Origin: Octopus sinensis | Lineage: Eukaryota | NCBI RefSeq assembly: GCF_006345805.1 | Contig: NC_043003.1 | Coordinates: forward strand, 9,548,001-9,612,000 | Length of the DNA stretch: 64,000 nt | Direction: 5' to 3' | Part shown: piece by piece, positions 9,613 through 64,000 of the stretch | Layout: each line of letters begins with the position of its first letter | Numbering within the stretch: position 1 is the first letter of the stretch | Position numbers and translations under genes: made by a program | Notes under the pieces: generated by a model | The model's database searches: none | Told to the model about the DNA's origin: nothing | What the model saw: only the letters and a program-made list of their open reading frames with translations

Positions 9613-10123
9613 AATAATAAATATAAAATCCCAAAACAAAGCAAATTAATAAATATGATTATAAAGATAGAAATTACCAAACAAGAGAGCAAAGAATAAA
9701 GGCGTCGTTAAAGAAGTGCATATATGGTATTGCATGCAGAGGTTTAAGCGGATAAAGATGAACGTGGGGAATAGAGAAGCAGTTTCTTGCTATTAAGGAT
9801 AATGATACGATACTGCCATTAAGGACATTGATATATATTTTCCTTAAATGAATTGCCGTTTGCAAGAATATATTATTAGTGCGGCATAAAGTTCAAACAT
9901 ATATCCTCACCTTCATCATTATATGTTGTACTAATTATTCTTCAACACACTCAGGTACGAAACAGCCGCCGACATGTCCATTTGTATCAGAGCCTTTGTG
10001 AAAAGAAACGAACTTTCAAAAACAATCTAAAGCAGCGAAGATCAGTTTAATTAATAACTTAGGAAAATAATTCGGTTGTAGTACCCATTGCTTTATTATT
10101 ATTATTATTACTATTATTAGTGA

Positions 10124-10460
10124 AGGCGCATGACTCAGTGGTAAGATCGTTGAGCTTACGATCGCGAGATTGTGAGTTCGAATCCCGGACCGGGCTGCGT
10201 GTTGTGTTCTTGAGCAAGACACTTTATTTCACATTGCTCCAGTTTACTCAGCTGTAGAAATGAGTTGCGACGTCACAGGTGCCAAGCTGTATCGGCTTTT
10301 GACTTTCCCTTGGATAACATCAGTGGTGGCGAGAGAGGAGGCTGGTATGCATGGGCGACTGCTGGTCTTCCCTAAACAACCTTGTCCGGACTTGTACCTG
10401 GGAGGGTAACTTTCTAGGTGGTGCAATCCCATGGTCATTCATGACCGAAGGGTGTCTCAG
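10124..10460 (+). mobile_element. tRNA-derived CORE-type SINE (family B)
   Basis: A box TGACTCAGTGG (10131), B box GTTCGAATCC (10176), CORE-like gtgttcttgagcaagacac...cagctgtagaaatgag, then an (ATT)n tail. Confidence 0.8.
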
Positions 10461-11040: not shown

Positions 11041-11088
11041 ATGGCTCAGGAAAATCCCTTTTTCCATCAAGTTCAACAAAACATAGGT
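11041..11088 (+). CDS. Candidate first coding exon of the Hv channel gene (MAQENPFFHQVQQNI...)
   Basis: aaaatcATGG start context and 15 open codons, followed by possible donors ATAG|GTGTAG (exon end 11086, phase 1, fits an acceptor at 11962) or GGT|GTAGTC (end 11088, phase 0, fits the acceptor at 11952). No homology support. Confidence 0.3.
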
Positions 11089-11951
11089 GTAGTCATTTGA
11101 AAGAGTTTTAATTTATAATTTACCACTTGTATATAAGAGTGTATAGTTACCGATACTGATGCACTCATATTTTCACATTCCACTCATATGAAATAAATAT
11201 TATATATCACCAGCACATTTCCCTGGAAACACTTATAAAATCTTGGACAAATTCAAATTAAATGTATATCCAAGAATTTTATATCTCTTCTTTCAGTCGT
11301 TTGAGATTTTTCTAAAACACTCTTTTTAAAGAAAGCTAATTGGAAACAATAACAGTTATTGATTAGCTCGTCCTATTAATTCCATTTATGAGAAATGTAT
11401 ATTATGTGTTTACCTTTCGGCTACCATATATTTACTTCTGATAATATGAAAATGTAGTCTAAAATTCCTACTTATGAAGGAAAATAGGATTTTCGAATTA
11501 GTTTTTTTAGAAACAATACATTTAAAATATGTCAAGAGTTGACTATTTTTGAAGCTGTTTTATGCTATGCTCTGTAACATATTTTATGTAATATAATTTT
11601 GTTTTAAGATATATTTGACAGCTCAAGTAAGATTCACGATTAAATATTGTTATTACTAATTCAAAACTAAAATTTAAACACTTTTTTCAAAATAATAAAA
11701 ATAAGAGATGTGATTTTTCACAGTTGTAGTATCAATTTGCTGATTTTTTCAGTAATTACTAACACATAAATGCAATTTTCTTACACCGATAATATTTCAA
11801 ATGTGATTTGACTGTGTGTGATATGAATAAACACTGTTAGTTTTAAATCGTACGTTTTATCCCTGCTATTCATTTACTAATCAGTTTCTGCTTCATTTAT
11901 TTATTTTTTTTAATGTTTTACTCCATACCACCAAAACTAAAATATCTACAG

Positions 11952-12073
11952 GCGTTGGTAGCTGAGACTTTGATATTAGCGAAAACCCATGGCTACGCGG
12001 ATAAGATTGAAAATGAGTTGGAAGAAGAATTGCGTCGTGACAGTAAGGGGCCCCCAAAAGAAATTTCGGCGAG
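11952..12073 (+). CDS. HVCN1: Probable N-terminal cytosolic exon of the Hv channel (ALVAETLILAKTHGYADKIENELEEELRRDSKGPPKEISA-R)
   Basis: ctacAG acceptor, 122 nt open in one frame, strong GAG|GTAAGT donor. It ends in phase 2 (AG), which joins the first A of exon 53719 to give AGA (Arg) in frame with S1. Confidence 0.62.
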
Positions 12074-18770: not shown

Positions 18771-21700
18771 TAATAATAACCTGTATATTGTAAAACTACT
18801 TTGGGATTTCTTGTATTTTTATTTGTATTGACTAGACTCTTACTGCATAGTCATCGTCCAGTTCCTCTCCTGCTTGTGTTAATGATAATGTTTACTATAC
18901 ATTATAAAGAAAGAATATTGCAAACTACAGAATTCGTTTACTGCTGCCCACAAACATATAGAGTTCATTTAAATTATCATTTAATCTATGTATTTCATTG
19001 TCTCTTGTCTTTGCAGAGGCACTTTTAGTCATGATATGTATCTCTATAAATCGTGTGATAACAACCTACGTATAATATGTAACAGCTAATAGATTACTAA
19101 CGTATAAATAGCAGCTGGATTTTATTTGATTCCTCCAGTCATAGAAGAATGTAATGTTGTGTTATTCGTTGTCTGTACTGTGTTTGTGTTAGTGCAAACG
19201 TTCGATAATTATGTATCATCAAAGTCTGTTTAAGTTTTAAACATTAATATAAATTTAATATTCTGTAAGTCTATTCTGTCTTATTTCTATATTGATTGTA
19301 TGTGTTGTGGTTAACATGAGATATTTATTATATTGCTTTATTGTCTGTTGAAATCAGTTCATCTGCATGTTGAGGCCATATATATCTGCTGAAGTTTTAA
19401 ATGTCTAAATTGGCTTGTATCTCAGATTAAAGGTCACATAGGAAATTTTTGTTTGTATATCTGAAAAGTAAATTCATATGAATAACAAAAACCACAGTTG
19501 AATATAGAACTAAGAAATTGATAAAAGAATTTTAATATTACAGCATCATATAGACACATTAAAACATAATAGTAGAATGAAAAATTGATAATGCAGTGAC
19601 GAACTCCATCATATGTGAGCTGTTATGCCACAATAATGGAAGGACCTATATATAACAGAGAAGATCATAGCAATACTTAATCTGCAGCTGCAAGGTATAT
19701 TATTTGTAAATATGTTATTTAAAGCATGAGTCAACAAACTTTTATCAGAGAAGCTTTTATATCTTGGAGGAGTAATGATGCTTTTAAGCGACACATCTAA
19801 CACAGTCATGACACCACTACTTCAAATATATAATAAAAGTTTACATTACCGATGTAAATTTGTAAATTCCTAATATTTGGGATGGAGTGCACTTTATTTA
19901 TGAGGTTGTTTCCAGTCGAGTTATTTGTCACTGTGTCTACACTCTCTCACTGGGTTGGAGTTCTTTTCTTTACACGAATTCGTTTTTAGCGAAGCTGTTC
20001 AATGAATAAATTGTATTTTCAACTATACTTTCTGTATAGTTGATATTATTGCATTAAAGTAAAACTTTGATGAAAGTAAAAGATTTTGCGCAAGATGTCA
20101 ATAGTAGTGTAAACCAAAAAAAAACAAAAACATTTTCATCATGCGCACAAGTCTGCACTATTCTTCAAAAATTCTCTACGTGATACACGGACGCAAGCAT
20201 AAAAACGCATTCATACATATCCACACACACACGCGCGCACGCACATACTCGCACACACACAAATATATATATACGTCAGTGTGTTTAAGTGCAGTAATGT
20301 TTGGTTATATGTGCTCACATGTATATATGAATACACACGTATAAATAATGTAAGCAATTTGATAATTCATAATATCAGTTCTCTTCTTTCTAATAATCAT
20401 TTATAGCAATGGCTATCTGATTTCAACGAAAAATGTCAGTTATTATCCAACAGTATCTCTCAAGTTGTATCAGACAATGTAATCGCTACTAATTTTGTGG
20501 AATTTGTTCCTGGACAATAATTCGTTTTCACTCTTTTTCGCCATAATGATAGTTGGTAAATTACATATTTGTGCCTCTCTCTGATCACCATTCTTTTGTT
20601 GAAGTTGACATTTTTGGTTTCTTTTTTGTCGCAGTTTTCAAATTTATTTTCTCTCCTCACGTTCCTGTTACTTACGACTGCAAATATATCTGTTTTGATC
20701 TTATTTTTCTCACCCTCAGTTACACTATTACTATTCCTCCTAGATCTCGAAATAAACTTTTCAAAGACTGCAACATAAGTGTCGTGGAGGACTTTCAGCA
20801 TGATCTTTGAGAGTATTTTCTGCATTCCGCTATCAAGACCATGGTGAGAGTCTGCCGCAACAGTATTTTCAACTGTTTGTCTCCCAGCTCCATGCAAAGA
20901 AAAACAGACTTGTCCCTAGATAAGCTGGTAGTCTCTTAGCTATGTGTACTTTGAACAATACAACAATGTTTTTCGATGTTGTGAAGTTTCCGCAATTCAA
21001 TCATTGCATGGATACTGTAATTGAGTTGTATGTGTATAAAGACATGCGTATATATGTATGTATATATGTGCATATGGCAATAAGATTTTGTATGATTCCT
21101 AATATGACCTAATTCTAATAATTAATATGTGCGCGCGCAATTGGTGTATGCATTCTTTGTGCTTTGTGTACATAGCAATGTTTTTGTAGTGTACAAGTGT
21201 CTGATCACTATGCCTTATTCCAGGAAACATGTAATCATATTAAAGGATGTGTTCATTCGCTTATTGAAACAGAAACGGATTTGGTTAGCATCCACCGAGC
21301 AAAGAATATCTCAGGATAACTCGGATGAAACTGTGAAGTCACTAGAACTGCGATATATGCAAAGTCATCTGAAAAAGAATATTGCGCGAGTATTGTCCTC
21401 GTTTTTGAGGAATATTTTTCCTGCGCTCGGCAAATTACTGGAGCTGAAATCGATTTAGGCGTTTTGTATGCAGAATATTGCCAAGCGTTCACTAAACTTA
21501 ATCAGTTGGCCAACGTGATTGTTGGAGCATAAACTCTGACATTCTGTGGTGGAGTATATGAATGACAATAACCAGACAACAGGTCAATGCATCGGATGAA
21601 AGTTTAACACTTCAGCAGGACATTCATGTGCAAGGCTATGAAGAATTCAGCTTCAAAAAGACACAGTAAGTCTGTGATTGGGGGGGGGGGTTGCGGATGT

Positions 21701-30411: not shown

Positions 30412-30808
30412 TCCGTTTCTACTCTAGGCACAAGGCCCGAAATTTTGGGGGAGGGGGCAATCGATTACATCGACCCCACTACACAACTGGTACTTAATTT
30501 ATCGACCCCGAAAGGATGAAAGGCAAAGTCGACCTCGGCGGAATTTGAACTCAGAACGTAGCGGCAGACGAAATACCTATTTCTTTACTACCCACAAGGG
30601 GCTAAACACAGAGAGGACAAACAAGGACAGACAAACGGATTAAATCGATTATATCGACCCCAGTGCGTAACTGGTACTTATTTAATCGACCCCGAAAGGA
30701 TGAAAGGCAAAGTCGACCTCGGTGGAATTTGAACTCAGAACGTAGCGGCAGACGAAATACGGCTAAGCCTTTCGTCCGGCATGCTGACGAATCTGCTAGC
30801 TCACCACC
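30412..30808 (-). mobile_element. Family A SINE dimer
   Basis: Head-core-tail2 joined to headless core-tail1 at GAAATACCTATTTC (30570-30583). Confidence 0.85.
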
Positions 30809-45086: not shown

Positions 45087-46855
45087 AATATATACATCCA
45101 TACATACATATCACATAAACATATATATATATATATGCATTTTATTGTTGTTATTATCATTATTGCCAACAGTTTGATTTCAACACATTCCGAATATACG
45201 TGTTACAACACACACGCGCACGTACATACATGTGTGTGTTTACAGTATACACACATACATACCCAAAAACATACACACTTACTCGCACATATATTGCTAT
45301 TGAAATAATCACCAAAAAGAGCGAATAAGATTATGAGGCAGCGAGGAGTACAATGCACAGATAATCCATGAAGTCAAACCAGAAAAATATGTACCAGAAA
45401 ATGCATAGAAATACGAAACGAAGCGTATATTAAAGAATGTGTAACCTGACAAATAATACATCAACGAATGAAATAGAAAAGACTCTAACGTTCCAGTTTA
45501 TATTCTCAATAAAAGAGAAAGAACAATAATGAGAAAGTGAAGTGGAAAGGAAATAGTAACGAAACCAAATTTACAGCGTCTCTGTTATATTGTCGAATAC
45601 CTTCGGGACAGAATAACAAAGCTTCAAATGACACAAAGCATATAACATTTATTATTCCGCCGAAACAAATCAGTGTTGCTAATTCGTGGATTAACCATAG
45701 CAACAGAATCCATTCTGTAGATATTCAAATATCAAATCCAATATAAACGGTACATCAATCTCTGGGGTGGGTCCTTATATATATATATATAATGAGCTTT
45801 GCTGTGTTAAGTACTGGTTATCACAAAAGTATTAAGGTAAATATATACATTCTTTCAGAATAATAAGGAAATGTTAAAAACAGTTTACAAGAAAGTATTT
45901 AAGAAAGTAAAAACTATTTTGAATTCAATAAAAATCATGTTTGTTTGATAGTATATATATATATATTATATATATATATATATATAGGAATATATACATC
46001 CATACATACATATCACATAAACATATATATATATATATATGCATTTTATTGTTGTTATTATCATTATTGCCAACAGTTTGATTTCAACACATTCCGAATA
46101 TACGTGTTACAACACACACGCGCACGTACATACATGTGTGTGTTTACAGTATACACACATACATACCCAAAAACATACACACTTACTCGCACATATATTG
46201 CTATTGAAATAATCACCAAAAAGAGCGAATAAGATTATGAGGCAGCGGGGAGTACAATGCACAGATAATCTATGAAGTCAAACCAGAAAAATATGTACCA
46301 GAAAATGCATAGAAATACGAAACGAAGCGTATATTAAAGAATGTGTAACCTGACAAATAATACATCAACGAATGAAATAGAAAAGACTCTAACGTTCCAG
46401 TTTATATTCTCAATAAAAGAGAAAGAACAATAATGAGAAAGTGAAGTGGAAAGGAAATAGTAACGAAACCAAATTTACAGCGTCTCTGTTATATTGTCGA
46501 ATACCTTCGGGACAGAATAACAAAGCTTCAAATGACACAAAACATATAACATTTATTATTCCGCCGAAACAAATCAGTGTTGCTAATTCGTGGATTAACC
46601 ATAGCAACAGAATCCATTCTGTAGATATTCAAATATCAAATCCAATATAAACGGTACATCAATCTCTGGGGTGGGTCCTTATATATATATATATAATGAG
46701 CTTTGCTGTGTTAAGTACTGGTTATCACAAAAGTATTAAGGTAAATATATACATTCTTTCAGAATAATAAGGAAATGTTAAAAACAGTTTACAAGAAAGT
46801 ATTTAAGAAAGTAAAAACTATTTTGAATTCAATAAAAATCATGTTTGTTTGATAG

Positions 46856-53718: not shown

Positions 53719-53843
53719 ATTACGTCGAAAAGGAGAGATGTTTTTCCATAGCCGCTTTGTGATTTTAACCGTTGTTATTTTGTGCGTTCTTGACTGCGCC
53801 TTGGTCCTGGGAGAACTTATTTTGGACTTGCACAGTGTTAGAG
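53719..53843 (+). CDS. HVCN1: Voltage-gated proton channel exon encoding S0-S1 (LRRKGEMFFHSRFVILTVVILCVLDCALVLGELILDLHSVR)
   Basis: tatttcAG acceptor and GAG|GTAAGT donor. The translation matches human Hv1 S1 ([25 protein letters not shown]), with the D112-equivalent Asp codon at 53792-53794. Confidence 0.92.
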
Positions 53844-55681
53844 GTAAGTGATTTGCTTTACCCTAATTATTGTAATCGGTAGAATAATGTTTTATGAGAA
53901 ACTAAAATATATTTTCTTAGAAAAGATATATAAATCTTGTTACCAAATTGCCAAATATTTCTTAGGTTACTTTTCTTTGGAAAAAAATATGAGGCACTTA
54001 GTCTTTGATATAAACAAAGAACCATTCCTTTTCTTTTTGTATATCAATATGAGAACATGATACATAAAAATCCCAAACATATCTAAATTTATCAATGCAA
54101 GCGTTTTATTTAAGAATTTGAGTCTGCGATTATCTGTCCTATAATTTAAATTCCTTAGTCTTATGACCGCCATGCATTATCTATTTAATCTTTGTATTAT
54201 TTGATACATAGGTCAGTAATTAATAGATCACTAATAATAAGTCATAGATTGTTGGCCGTCTATCATTGTATTAATATCGCTCGTCTACATACCATTGATG
54301 AAAAGTCAGAGCTCTTTGTTACACAGTTTGTTGGTTTCATACCTCTTTACTAATAACTATTTTTCTAATCATCTTCAAAGTATATTTCATTGTTCTGTAG
54401 CCGTGATTGTTATAACATTGATACTGTTCCTCAAAGGAATATAAAAGGATTGAGATTTATATTCACTAAACCACCCGTGCGCCAGCCTAAAGCAGAGACA
54501 CATGAAGCACCACATGGAACGAAATCATTTACATTAGTTTGTAATAAGACGGATTATACGAATACTTAGCAGAATAACCTTTTGTTTTGATTACAGTAGT
54601 AATCCCTCTGGCCAGGGAAGTGATAAGATTCTTTAACTCCTGCGATTTATGATTATACAAGCATTCATCTTTCTTACAATAAATTGAGTTCAGCACTGTC
54701 TGATACTTGAACAGAAATTCTTGTTAGTCTCTCTCTTGCTAAGTTCAGGGATGTTTCCAGGCTATTGTTAAGTGTTCACTTTATAGGTTTTCAACAAGTT
54801 TAACTAGATTTAGCTGTAGGGCCTTGAGAATAATCTGGTTGAAAAATTACTTCCTGTGAATGACACGTAAAATGGCAATGACAGAGAAATAAGTTCGCTT
54901 CCAAAAAATTTCTGTTTTGTTTTTTAGCGTTCTCTCAATAATTTAAAGGCAGATAACAATCCTAAAACTGATAGTATTCTTCATTGTTTCTCTAACACAG
55001 TTAGAAAGAAATGTTCTCACGATTTGTATTTCACATATTTCAATCAATCGTTTCCAAAGATTGAGCTTTTTCGCCTCATTTCTCGATGACTTTGTGCTAA
55101 ACTTCTGCTCTCTGTCTCTAACCAATAAAAAAAGATTTTCCGATTCTCAAGAACATTCCTGCGTGGTCCATTTTTACGTCATATTCATACTCTAAATCCA
55201 ATTCCAAAATGCTTCTGTATCTTATATCTATGTTGCTTTAACTAAACCCACCATCTGCTAGCATTTGAGGTATTTCCTTTTACGTATATGGCAATCAAAA
55301 AGAACGAAGTAAATGTTAAGTCACTTACCATGCTCTCTTGTGTTTCTTCTGTTCTTGTGAATTTAACCCTAATCGTCGTCTCATCTCTCCTATACTGGAT
55401 TTTGTTGCACCTTCTCACTGTCTTTTAGCTAATTGTTAAAAGAATAAAACAAGGTATTGCACATTACTTAATCATCGTTATATGTTTTATCTTATATTTA
55501 AGCTTTCTATAATATGTAATTTTCTAGATTGTATAATTTAATTTTTCATTATTGAATTGATAAAATGTGTTTTTTTTCTAATTTATATATATATTATATT
55601 TTGTGAAATTTGATTTAGTATTTCTAGATTGAATTTTTCCCTGTAAGTTTGGAATAATATTCCCTCATATTATATATATAT

Positions 55682-61570: not shown

Positions 61571-62477
61571 CACATGCATACATTTGTATCTGTACATGTA
61601 TATATGGGTGTGCGACCCTGTGTTTATGTATGCAAGTGAGTTCGTATTTGTTTCCAGGGATATGTATGAGTGTGTGCGTGGCTATGTATGTCTGTGTGTA
61701 CGTGGACGTGTATGTGTGTGTGCATAAACTGATTTTAAACTCTTCAATTCTTTATACATATTTCCGTCCTAGCTATCTTCTATTTTCATCTATCTAATGT
61801 TTGTAATAATCTTTCCCTTCTTCGTTAACTTCTACCTTCTGTCTGCATCTCTCTTTCATTATCCACTTCTGTTTTGACATCTTATTCTGTATCTCATGCT
61901 ACTTTTCTCTCTCTAACGCATATTTTATCCATTTTATCCAATATCGCAAACAAGTATATCTCATGAAATATTTGTAAATTTATTTTACAGCAGCTCTTGA
62001 GCTTATTAGTCGATAATACTTTGTACTTCATGTGCAAATGAATACGTTGAATATTTATCATAGCTGTTTTGCGAAGTTTTCTCGAATGTATTTAGATTAA
62101 GATCTACAATTTAGAATTTGAAAGAAAAACGTGATGGTTGTAGTCCCCACACACACACACACATCATATATGTGTGTGTATGTGTGTCTTATGCTTATAT
62201 GTTTCTGTACATCAAGCTATAATTATTCCTTCCAGAAATAATTAATATTGAAATAGATGATAACCAATCTGGTATTTTATTGTATGTATGTAACTTTTTT
62301 TTAATACGAAGTTAGATGTAAGAGCATATTAGCTTTGAAAAAACGTTTAATCATAATTAATTTAATATAAATTGATTATTTTACCATGTTTACATAATAT
62401 TTACTGTTTCAATGAGCCAAATATTCTAAACATTATACTTGGAAAATCTCATTTTGTATTTTTTGCTTACATTTCAG

Positions 62478-62803
62478 ACACGCTGCAAGAAACAGAAAAA
62501 CTTAGTGATTCATTTATAAATAAACTCAGGAAAAAATACCCAGCAGACATGGAAGGCATGCAGGAGCACTTGATCTATGTTTATGAAAAAGTTCTAGACT
62601 CCGTAATGACGTGGCCCAAGAATAGCTCGGTGCCCAACACAACCCGTCCAATACACCGCTCGCGACGTGCAGCCGACGTCGACCCTATAATGGAAAAGTG
62701 GAATGTTCATGTGCGGTTACCCGGCTCTCATACGCTCGAAGAAGAGATAGGGCACGCCTTCCATTTGGCCAGTATCTCCATACTTGCAGTCTTAGTCGCT
62801 GGT
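62478..62803 (+). CDS. HVCN1: Hv channel exon encoding the long S1-S2 loop and S2 (DTLQETEK...RSRR...EEEIGHAFHLASISILAVLVA-G/E)
   Basis: atttcAG acceptor; phase 1 continues the S1 exon (G+AC = Asp). The C-terminal part matches human S2 FHYMSITILVFFMME. The donor is at 62802 (phase 1) or 62804 (phase 0). Confidence 0.88.
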
Positions 62804-63289
62804 GTAAATATGCACTTTTATTTTTCCATTATTCATTATGTTCTTAAGAAAAAAAAATGGTAAACGATAAAATGCACTTCACATAAATAACCATCAATTG
62901 TGTAAACAAAATATATCTGAGGGTTTATGTGCATATGTGGGTTGTGCGCGTGATGCTTTGCGTGTATGTATATATGTATATATACTTTCATTGTTTAATT
63001 GGCAGGTAGTTATAAAAGTGAGCGGAGGCTCGAGAGATTTTGATATGGCGTTTATCTTTATTTACGCATACACACGCAAACACAAAAACACGGGTCCGTG
63101 CGCTCACACACACACACACACAGGCTTACAGGTTTGGTAGAACAAACAAATTAGTTAAAGTGCCATGGTATAAAATCCTTCGCTGTTTATTCGCTTATAT
63201 AATTTATAGGCGATATTCTTAGACGTATCCATATGTAGACATGCATAAATATGTATATGCATATGCTGGTATATTAATTTATTATTAAT

Positions 63290-63565
<276 letters not shown>

Positions 63566-64000
63566 TAATTTGTCACAAATCATTCTCTTACATTTTATGT
63601 TATTAATCCCCTTCTTACCTGAGTTAGTTTTAAATATTTATCATTATTGAACATGGTAGGTTTTATTCTAGCATTTTCCAGATTGTTTTATTAATCTATT
63701 TGCTTACCTATTTAGGTTTCAAAAAATGCAACTTGAACTGTAAGCTTACAAAATATAATACAGAATGGAGTTATCATCCAATATCTGACAAGTCTTCTTG
63801 TCATCATTTCAAAATTATCTTTCCGCTCCATCTTGTCATGTGACAAAATTTTGTAGAATGAAAGTCATTTTGGAAAGTAAAAAATTAGTTTTATGTAATA
63901 ATGAAGGACAATCCGCTGACTGTATCATGTTCTCTTCTCTCCACTTATGATAATATATTAAAGTGATTTTGTTGCATCTGTCAAGTTGAAGTAGACACGG

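What the first reader, a model, noticed from the sequence alone, without database searches (positions are those of the whole stretch)
62478..62760. Hv channel with a ~98-aa extracellular S1-S2 loop containing a furin-type site and two N-glycan sequons
Seen: 98 residues between LDL and FH (human has ~14), with NSS (62621) and NTT (62636) sequons followed by RSRR|AA (62657-62668) and five extra His. Established: S1-S2 is extracellular/luminal, R-X-R-R is the furin consensus, and proprotein-convertase cleavage regulates other channels such as ENaC. Inference: this proton channel may be matured or activated by cleavage into a two-chain voltage sensor, with a glycosylated ectodomain and possibly extra Zn2+ or pH sensing. 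I know of no such mechanism for Hv1-type channels, but cannot search.
Basis: partly seen in the sequence, partly recalled or inferred. Interest (0 to 1): 0.8.

Follow-up and report, generated by a model that had tools for sequence, protein, structure and literature searches.

The report
Conserved furin-type site in octopus proton channel
This octopus gene encodes a mollusc-type voltage-gated proton channel whose long outer loop carries a furin-type cutting motif that is kept across octopuses, snails and bivalves, so the channel may be cut into two chains as it matures, which has never been tested.

Summary
Window 62478-62803 is one exon, spliced in frame to the S1 exon (53719-53845). It encodes a 98-residue S1-S2 loop with NSS (62621), NTT (62636) and RSRR|AA (62657-62668).

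The three window exons are 100% identical to Octopus sinensis LOC115214246 and O. vulgaris proteins. The S4 of that protein, LLPWRVIRV, places it in the published molluscan HV3 class, typified by Aplysia AcHv3. Very long, His-rich S1-S2 loops are already described for that class, so the loop is not new.

What appears new is the basic site. In the window alone it is near chance (5% of shuffles). In the family, 29 of 65 non-redundant loops carry R-x-[KR]-R, against 1.6 ± 1.2 expected. In the octopus orthologue group it fills one aligned column in 19 of 20 sequences, within otherwise unalignable sequence. AlphaFold puts RSRRA in the least confident stretch of the loop. All 18 O. sinensis isoforms and the assembled transcripts of another octopod keep the whole loop.

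The first sequon is conserved among octopods and the second is not. Cleavage, and any effect on gating, are untested. No squid, cuttlefish or Nautilus sequence could be identified.

The parts
11952..12073 (+). Coding exon for the cytosolic N-terminal helix (ALVAETLILAKTHGYADKIENELEEELRRDSKGPPKEISA + AG of the Arg codon). It is followed by a 41.6-kb intron.
   Evidence: tblastn of P0016 against the window. Splice sites read directly: ctacag|GCG and GAG|gtaagt.
53719..53845 (+). S1 exon: (R)LRRKGEMFFHSRFVILTVVILCVLDCALVLGELILDLHSVR. It contains the selectivity-filter Asp (VLDCA) and the E and D of ELILDL. The donor is in phase 1.
   Evidence: 100% identical to O. sinensis and O. vulgaris proteins. 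Aligns to human Hv1 S1.
62478..62803 (+). Exon encoding the whole extracellular S1-S2 loop plus the first half of S2 (FHLASISILAVLVAG).
   Evidence: The exon is 96.0% identical to a congener, against 71.8% and 81.6% for the flanking introns. In a more distant octopod only 62472-62810 is alignable.
62478..62620 (+). Conserved structured module of the loop. It consists of a helical extension of S1 (DTLQETEKLSDSFINKLRKKY), then YP, a second helix, and a near-invariant Trp (MTW).
   Evidence: AF2 full-length model: continuous helix 74-123 with pLDDT about 88-90, and helix 135-144. Trp sits at loop position about 50 in 70 of 72 family members.
62621..62629 (+). N-glycosylation sequon NSS (N152 of P0016).
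   Evidence: Read directly. Kept as NSS or NTS in all octopod sequences seen. All 72 family loops have at least one sequon.
62636..62644 (+). Second sequon NTT (N157), not conserved.
   Evidence: It is TTT in L001 and STP in Argonauta.
62657..62668 (+). R-S-R-R, followed by A-A. This is the candidate proprotein-convertase (furin-type) cleavage site, R164-R167 of P0016.
   Evidence: Conservation. It lies in the lowest-pLDDT segment of the model, residues 164-168.
62669..62759 (+). Variable spacer (AADVDPIMEKWNVHVRLPGS) and the conserved pre-S2 motif HTLEEEIGHA.
   Evidence: Alignments. The family consensus is HSxEExIAHxFH.
62760..62803 (+). Start of S2. It carries the conserved His (human H140 equivalent) and ends in Gly at the position of human E153.

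Best explanation
The window holds the first part of Octopus sinensis/vulgaris LOC115214246. This is a molluscan HV3-type voltage-gated proton channel: four helices S1-S4, no pore domain, S4 = xPWRxxR. The rest of the gene (the remainder of S2, S3, S4 and the C-terminal coiled coil) lies beyond base 64000.

Shown: one constitutive exon encodes a modular extracellular S1-S2 loop.
1. A fixed-length module of about 50 residues: a helical extension of S1, a second helix and a near-invariant Trp.
2. One or more N-glycan sequons just after the Trp.
3. A basic site R-x-[R/K]-R followed by a small or acidic residue.
4. A variable, often His-rich spacer.
5. The conserved HS/T-L-E-E-x-I-A/G-H-x-F-H entry into S2.

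Inferred: the basic site is cut by a furin-like proprotein convertase in the late secretory pathway. Cutting would give chain A (N-terminus, S1, glycosylated helical ectodomain) and chain B (short free tail, S2-S4, coiled coil). The two chains would stay together without a covalent link through packing of the four-helix bundle, because the octopus loop contains no cysteine. Cutting would free the outer end of S2 from the S1 extension and could set voltage or pH dependence. The direction of any such effect is unknown.
For: Gene identity:
- Exons are 100% identical to P0016, P0022 and P0025.
- The S4 is LLPWRVIRV.
- The family profile matches solved Hv1 structures 5OQK (E = 7e-19) and 3WKV (E = 9e-14) in two stretches, on either side of the loop.
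- The HV3 class and its large loops are described in PMC10377628 and PMC10911540.

The exon is real and constitutive:
- The exon is 96% identical to a congener, against 72-82% for the introns.
- The conserved island in a more distant octopod matches the exon edges.
- All 18 O. sinensis isoforms, the O. vulgaris and O. bimaculoides models, and at least 10 transcript-derived protein variants (Logan clusters of P0026 and P0027) from another octopod keep the whole loop.

Selection on the site:
- Octopods vary at P3, P5 and P6 and even carry an indel (HRSRR, I-RLRR, RRNRR, HRNRR, ERKRR), yet keep Arg at P4, P2 and P1.
- 29 of 65 non-redundant loops have R.[KR]R, against 1.6 ± 1.2 in composition-preserving shuffles (maximum 7 in 2000 shuffles).
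- Motif density is 3.6 per 1000 residues in loops and 0.65 per 1000 in the more basic cytosolic tails.
- In the orthologue-group alignment the site is a single column in 19 of 20 sequences spanning three molluscan classes. It is the only conserved element between the Trp and the pre-S2 motif.
- Of 72 family members, 35 have the full motif, 10 have RxxR, 13 have a dibasic site and 14 have none.
- P1' is A, S, T, E or N.

Accessibility: residues 164-168 (RSRRA) are the only loop stretch with pLDDT below 50.

Luminal side: this follows from the standard topology of voltage-sensor domains, and every one of 72 loops has at least one sequon.
Against: - There is no protein-level evidence of cleavage in any member.
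- The only electrophysiologically characterised HV3 channel, AcHv3, could not be retrieved. Its heterobranch relatives here (Bulinus, Biomphalaria) lack the site, and 14 of 72 members lack any basic site. Cleavage therefore cannot be essential to the fold or to conduction in general.
- Oysters have Pro at P2 (RNPR, RRPR), which by general knowledge makes a poor furin substrate.
- The sequences are phylogenetically related, so shuffle statistics overstate independence.
- A glycan at N157, ten residues upstream, could hinder access.
- The same R-x-R-R pattern occurs on the cytosolic side before S1 (RLRRKG), so basic clusters arise in this family for other reasons too.
Confidence: 0.6

Rival explanations
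1. The basic cluster is conserved but is not a cleavage site. It acts as an extracellular charged patch. It could pair with the acidic pre-S2 EEE motif, bind sulfated glycans or lipid head groups, or shape local surface potential, pH sensing or Zn2+ sensing.
For: The loops are His- and acid-rich and lie next to the known Zn2+/pH-sensing His of S2. All three Aplysia Hv channels are Zn2+-sensitive. A cytosolic RxRRKG cluster is also conserved in this family without being a convertase site.
Against: The conserved pattern is specifically Arg at P4 and P1, a basic residue at P2, and a small or acidic P1'. P3 is free and the distance to S2 is very variable. That is the signature of a protease recognition site rather than of a positioned charge patch. 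The site also sits in the least ordered stretch of the loop.
Confidence: 0.2
2. The site is cut, but as regulated or degradative processing rather than as maturation. Examples are cutting at the surface by extracellular trypsin-like proteases, or shedding of chain A that inactivates the channel. Uncut channels would then be the working form.
For: Thirteen family members have only a dibasic KR or RR site and ten have only RxxR, which fits other serine proteases as well. Mytilus models differ by a 20-residue segment that contains RVKR, which hints that the site can be optional.
Against: The full R-x-[KR]-R motif with basic P2 in 35 of 72 members is the constitutive furin consensus. There is no second site to release a fragment in octopus.
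Confidence: 0.12
3. The motif and the sequons are chance features of a fast-evolving, unconstrained linker.
For: In the single octopus loop, shuffles give R.[KR]R 5.2% of the time and two or more sequons 8.5% of the time. The second sequon is not conserved.
Against: Family-wide enrichment is about 18-fold over shuffles, and the site keeps one aligned column across three molluscan classes.
Confidence: 0.04
4. Most of the loop is removed from mature transcripts by an internal splice acceptor or by exon skipping.
For: None found.
Against: All 18 O. sinensis isoforms, 3 O. vulgaris models and 4 O. bimaculoides isoforms carry the complete loop. So do the transcript-derived proteins of another octopod, for example L007 and L008, contigs of 1.6-2.0 kb with an uninterrupted 478-residue reading frame.
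Confidence: 0.02

Closest known systems
Molluscan 'unconventional' HV3 proton channels, type member Aplysia californica AcHv3 (Chaves et al., FEBS J 2022, PMC10911540; review PMC10377628)
   Same: S4 motif xPWRxxR with the first Arg missing and Pro before Trp. S1 Asp selectivity filter. [quoted passage not shown] Helical post-S4 region. Molluscan distribution with many paralogues.
   Different: The octopus protein is much smaller (437 against 980 residues; loop 98 against 299; C-terminus about 160 against 535). The papers describe the loop as lacking obvious organisation. Here the family shows a fixed module of about 50 helical residues, a near-invariant Trp, sequons and a basic processing-type site. 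The papers read mention neither cleavage nor glycosylation of the loop.
AcHv2 (Aplysia), a conventional RxWRxxR channel with a 79-residue, 14-His S1-S2 loop
   Same: The loop length is comparable and rich in His.
   Different: AcHv2 keeps the canonical S4 signature, and the octopus gene does not.
Hv1Sper, post-translational cleavage of human Hv1 in sperm (Berger et al. 2017, cited in PMC10911540)
   Same: [quoted passage not shown]
   Different: That cut removes part of the cytosolic N-terminus. It does not split the voltage-sensor bundle and it is not a luminal convertase site.
ENaC alpha and gamma subunits, activated by furin
   Same: An R-x-R-R type site in an extracellular region of an ion channel, cut in the secretory pathway.
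   Different: ENaC activation needs two cuts that release an inhibitory tract. Octopus has a single site, and a cut there would separate transmembrane helices of one domain.
Furin-matured two-chain membrane proteins held together after cleavage, for example Notch S1 cleavage (general knowledge)
   Same: A single convertase cut yields two chains that remain associated as the functional unit.
   Different: Those are single-pass receptors whose ectodomains hold the chains together. Here the association would be helix packing within a four-helix voltage sensor.

Membership tests
Voltage-gated proton channel (Hv / HVCN1) family | Sequence homology to Hv1 voltage-sensor domains | tested here: met
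   The family profile (A5) hits human Hv1 5OQK at E = 7.4e-19 and mouse Hv1 chimera 3WKV at E = 9e-14. These were the only two PDB sequences with E of 0.01 or lower.
Voltage-gated proton channel (Hv / HVCN1) family | Asp selectivity filter in S1 (human D112) | tested here: met
   The window's S1 exon encodes VLDCALVLGELILDL, aligned to human VVLDALLVLAELILDL. The Asp is invariant in 64 of 64 sequences.
Voltage-gated proton channel (Hv / HVCN1) family | Canonical S4 signature RxWRxxR | tested here: not met
   S4 lies outside the window. In the identical-exon protein P0016 it is LLPWRVIRV, so the first Arg is absent and Pro precedes Trp. This is the published HV3 variant, which still conducts protons in AcHv3.
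Voltage-gated proton channel (Hv / HVCN1) family | Four-helix voltage sensor with no pore domain (no S5-S6) | tested here: met
   P0016 is 437 residues. The AF2 model of isoform P0024 shows helices S1 to S4, and S4 continues into one long C-terminal helix (256-327). There are no further transmembrane segments.
Voltage-gated proton channel (Hv / HVCN1) family | Voltage-gated, proton-selective current | not testable with these tools
   This needs heterologous expression and patch clamp. Only AcHv3 of this class has been recorded.
Molluscan HV3 ('unconventional') subfamily | xPWRxxR in S4 | tested here: met
   Of the 72 family members analysed, 66 have PWR and 6 have PWG. Octopus has LPWRVIR.
Molluscan HV3 ('unconventional') subfamily | [quoted passage not shown] | tested here: met
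   98 residues in the window. The family range is 92-248.
Molluscan HV3 ('unconventional') subfamily | Much enlarged intracellular domains | tested here: inconclusive
   The octopus N-terminus is about 73 residues and the C-terminus about 160, far smaller than the 535 of AcHv3.
Proprotein-convertase (furin-type) substrates | R-x-[K/R]-R consensus with a permissive P1' residue | tested here: met
   RSRR|AA at 62657-62668. Across the family, P1' is A, S, T, E or N.
Proprotein-convertase (furin-type) substrates | Site exposed to the secretory-pathway lumen or the extracellular side | tested here: met
   This follows from homology-based topology: the S1-S2 loop of voltage sensors is extracellular. 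It is supported by at least one N-glycan sequon in 72 of 72 loops. It has not been shown experimentally.
Proprotein-convertase (furin-type) substrates | Site in a flexible, accessible segment | tested here: met
   Residues 164-168 (RSRRA) are the only loop stretch with pLDDT below 50 in the full-length AF2 model. The exon-only model agrees, but at low confidence.
Proprotein-convertase (furin-type) substrates | Evolutionary conservation of the motif | tested here: met
   29 of 65 loops against 1.6 expected. The site occupies one aligned column in 19 of 20 orthologue-group sequences.
Proprotein-convertase (furin-type) substrates | Actual cleavage that depends on the motif and on a convertase | not testable with these tools
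   This needs western blot or mass spectrometry with an inhibitor, a mutant or a furin-deficient cell line.
ENaC-type activation by excision of an inhibitory tract | Two convertase sites flanking a releasable peptide | tested here: not met
   There is only one R.[KR]R in the octopus loop. O. bimaculoides has an overlapping RPTR/RSRR, not a second distant site.

The most novel reading that the evidence does not exclude
Convertase cleavage inside the S1-S2 loop is an ancestral maturation step of molluscan HV3 proton channels. It would produce the first known naturally two-chain voltage-sensor domain: S1 on one polypeptide and S2-S4 on another, held together only by helix packing. The cut would set the channel's voltage or pH dependence. 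Lineages that lost the site (heterodont bivalves, heterobranch snails) would then have a different gating set-point.
Probability: 0.3. Interest if true: 0.8.

Novelty: new variant of a known kind. Interest (0 to 1): 0.6.

Why it matters
Hv channels are the minimal voltage sensor, a four-helix bundle that is also the conduction pathway. If a large animal clade routinely cuts that bundle between S1 and S2, nature has run the 'split voltage sensor' experiment. S1 would be mechanically uncoupled from S2 on the outside, which bears on how S1 moves during gating and on the role of the S1-S2 loop.

The finding also gives the so far 'unorganised' HV3 loops a defined architecture: a helical module, glycans, a processing site, a spacer and a pre-S2 motif. 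It makes a cheap, decisive experiment possible. Finally, published or future recordings of HV3 channels in mammalian cell lines could come from cleaved, uncleaved or mixed populations.

Tried and rejected
1. The first word-indexed protein search with the joined S1+loop peptide found only three exon-sized ORF fragments and no spliced protein.
2. I first treated L002 as a possible distant cephalopod orthologue without the site. Its S1 and S4 match the heterodont-bivalve HHVKD.L paralogue group (Mya, Mercenaria, Mactra). It therefore says nothing about cephalopods.
3. A look-up of the window's own exon ORF to extend beyond base 64000 found nothing. S2b to S4 were taken from identical-exon proteins instead.
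5. tblastx of the window against the loci was swamped by microsatellite translations.
6. The AF2 model of the exon alone had mean pLDDT 52.7, so I used it only as weak support.
7. A Foldseek search of the full-length model against the PDB gave no hit below E = 0.7. The long helices dominate, so the result is uninformative.
8. Pfam found nothing significant in P0016. PF00520 is recorded for only some relatives.
9. The profile search did not retrieve Aplysia AcHv3 or any named squid, cuttlefish or Nautilus protein.
11. The supplement of PMC10377628 lists four O. bimaculoides XM accessions without sequences. I could not tell whether this gene is among them.

Full report
**1. What is in the window**

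The DNA is AT-rich (67%) and full of microsatellites, so it is eukaryotic.

A tblastn search with human Hv1 (sequence recalled from memory) found an S1-like exon at 53719-53845. It encodes LRRKGEMFFHSRFVILTVVILCVLDCALVLGELILDLHSVR and ends in AGA G|gtaagt. The finding lies in the next coding exon, 62478-62803. Its acceptor is tttcag|AC and its donor is GGT|GTAAAT. The phases fit, since G + AC gives Asp.

The joined peptide has exactly 98 residues between LDL and FH. A third, upstream exon (11952-12073) encodes a cytosolic N-terminal helix and is followed by a 41.6-kb intron. The rest of S2, together with S3, S4 and the C-terminus, lies beyond base 64000.

**2. Whose gene it is and whether the exon is real**

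A full HMMER scan of 1.8 billion representative proteins with the exon peptide returned P0004. This is a 436-residue spliced protein, Octopus bimaculoides LOC106869300. Cluster members include O. sinensis LOC115214246 and O. vulgaris models. The three window exons are 100% identical to these. The window is therefore O. sinensis or O. vulgaris.

The annotated proteins join S1 to the loop exon exactly as inferred. Three lines of evidence support the exon:
- The exon is 96.0% identical to a congener's genomic contig, while the flanking introns are 71.8% and 81.6% identical.
- In a more distant octopod only 62472-62810 can be aligned at all.
- All 18 O. sinensis isoforms, 3 O. vulgaris models and 4 O. 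bimaculoides isoforms contain the complete loop. So do at least ten transcript-derived protein variants from another octopod, for example contigs of 1.6-2.0 kb with an uninterrupted 478-residue reading frame.

**3. Family**

The S4 of the octopus protein reads FLLPWRVIRVVNS. The motif xPWRxxR, together with a very large S1-S2 loop, defines the 'unconventional' molluscan HV3 channels of Chaves and co-workers. Its type member AcHv3 conducts protons (PMC10911540, PMC10377628). Those papers already report a 79-residue, 14-His loop in AcHv2 and a 299-residue, 13-His loop in AcHv3. They also mention four putative Hv genes in O. bimaculoides. A long, His-rich loop is therefore a known family trait.

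A profile of 64 family members matches only two PDB sequences: human Hv1 (5OQK, E = 7e-19) and the mouse Hv1 chimera (3WKV, E = 9e-14). Each match comes as two stretches, on either side of the loop. The S1 Asp is invariant.

**4. The basic site**

In the single octopus loop the motif is unremarkable. R.[KR]R appears in 5.2% of shuffles. Conservation changes the picture.

Among octopods the flanks drift, and there is even a one-codon deletion. The variants are PIHRSRR|AA, PT-RSRR|AA, PI-RLRR|AA, PLRRNRR|AS, PLHRNRR|AS and PVERKRR|AA. Arg at P4, P2 and P1 is kept in all of them.

Two word-indexed searches gave about 115 molluscan relatives. The results on their loops are as follows.
- Among 65 non-redundant S1-S2 loops, 29 contain R.[KR]R. 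Composition-preserving shuffles give 1.6 ± 1.2, with a maximum of 7 in 2000 shuffles.
- RxxR occurs in 43 loops, against 13.6 ± 3.0 expected.
- The motif is 5.6 times denser in the loops than in the same proteins' cytosolic tails, which are richer in Arg and Lys.
- In an alignment of the octopus orthologue group the site falls in a single column in 19 of 20 sequences. It is the only conserved feature between the near-invariant Trp and the pre-S2 motif. The group comprises four octopods plus Haliotis, Patella, Gigantopelta, Babylonia, Nucella, three scallops, three oysters, mytilids and Solemya.
- Mapped on a neighbour-joining tree of the transmembrane core, 35 of 72 members have the full motif, 10 have RxxR followed by a small or acidic residue, 13 have a dibasic site and 14 have none.
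- The members without a site form a few clades: two heterodont-bivalve groups, Bulinus, and scattered single sequences.

These counts are not phylogenetically independent. The spread across three classes, amid otherwise unalignable sequence, is still hard to explain without selection on the motif.

**5. Architecture of the loop**

The full-length AlphaFold model used 64 aligned sequences and reached mean pLDDT 75.9.
- S1 is one continuous helix from residue 74 to 123. It therefore extends about 24 residues beyond LDL, with pLDDT about 88-90.
- A second helix spans residues 135-144.
- A disordered stretch spans residues 145-189 and holds both sequons. Its only sub-50 pLDDT segment is 164-168, which is RSRRA.
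- S2 begins at about residue 190, in HTLEEEIGHAFH.

The Trp that ends the structured module sits at loop position about 50 in 70 of 72 members. Every loop has at least one sequon, with a median of 4. The first octopus sequon is kept among octopods. The second is lost in L001 and in Argonauta.

**6. Mechanism**

Shown:
- Gene identity and constitutive inclusion of the exon.
- The modular loop architecture.
- A conserved furin-consensus site in a flexible region.
- Placement of that region on the luminal side. This last point rests on homology-based topology and on the sequons.

Inferred: a furin-like convertase cuts after R167 in the late secretory pathway. This would give chain A (N-terminus, S1 and the glycosylated helical ectodomain) and chain B (S2-S4 and the coiled coil). 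The chains would be held together by bundle packing, because the octopus loop has no cysteine.

What the cut does to gating is unknown. The ENaC model of releasing an inhibitory tract does not fit, because there is only one site. Clades without the site exist, including the heterobranch relatives of AcHv3. Cleavage therefore cannot be universally required for function.

I put about 0.6 on real convertase cleavage in vivo. I put about 0.2 on a conserved charge patch that is not cleaved, about 0.12 on regulated or degradative cutting by other proteases, and little on chance or splicing.

**7. Novelty**

No paper in the searchable library links Hv channels with furin or proprotein convertases. 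The two HV3 papers mention neither glycosylation nor cleavage of the loop. The known proteolytic Hv isoform, Hv1Sper, is cut in the cytosolic N-terminus.

The gene and its long loop are known kinds. The conserved processing-type site, and the two-chain voltage sensor it implies, would be a new variant.

**8. Limits**

- There is no protein-level evidence.
- AcHv3 itself and named squid, cuttlefish or Nautilus sequences could not be retrieved.
- The statistics ignore phylogeny.
- The S2b-S4 features come from proteins whose exons are identical to the window, not from the window itself.

Noticed in passing
window 62801-62803 (last codon of the exon, GGT): The S2 position equivalent to human Hv1 E153 is Gly in octopods (VLVAG|TLLK). 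It is Glu in 59 of 72 family members and Gly only in the four octopod sequences. A conserved countercharge of the voltage sensor is therefore missing in this lineage.
   Followed up: partly
window 53720-53737: The cytosolic pre-S1 segment RLRRKG is also an R-x-R-R motif. It is conserved family-wide (consensus RxRRKG). Because it is on the cytosolic side, it is not a convertase site. It shows that basic clusters are conserved in this family for other reasons too.
   Followed up: partly
P0039 versus P0041 and P0064 (Mytilus galloprovincialis and M. edulis proteins): The M. galloprovincialis model lacks a 20-residue segment (SSIQYKVRVKRTLPMSTILPV) that holds the RVKR site in M. edulis. This is either an optional cassette carrying the processing site or a gene-model error.
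   Followed up: no
L002:10028-20150: This ENA contig carries a paralogous HV3-type gene, apparently of the heterodont-bivalve kind. S1 lies at 10028-10150, a loop exon of about 150 residues with many sequons and no basic site at 11075-11540, and S3-S4 with PWRVIRV at about 19990-20100. An RVT_1/RNase_H retroelement sits in the intron.
   Followed up: partly
window 12074-53718: A 41.6-kb intron separates the N-terminal exon from the S1 exon. It contains repeated segments, for example near-identical peptide matches 904 bases apart at 45315 and 46219 and again at 45646 and 46550, and similar fragments at 30485 and 49079. These are presumably transposon copies.
   Followed up: no
window 63290-63570: A long compound (TA)n/(TATC)n/(CA)n microsatellite lies about 500 bases downstream of the exon. 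Similar simple repeats in L001 and L002 produced many spurious BLAST matches.
   Followed up: no
P0056, P0094 and four other family members: Six of 72 family members have PWG instead of PWR in S4, so a second gating Arg is lost. These may no longer be voltage-gated proton channels.
   Followed up: no
P0016, P0004 (database names): RefSeq names the octopus gene 'uncharacterized protein', while UniRef labels the O. vulgaris copy 'Voltage-gated hydrogen channel 1'. I could not tell whether it is one of the four O. bimaculoides Hv genes listed by accession in the supplement of PMC10377628.
   Followed up: partly
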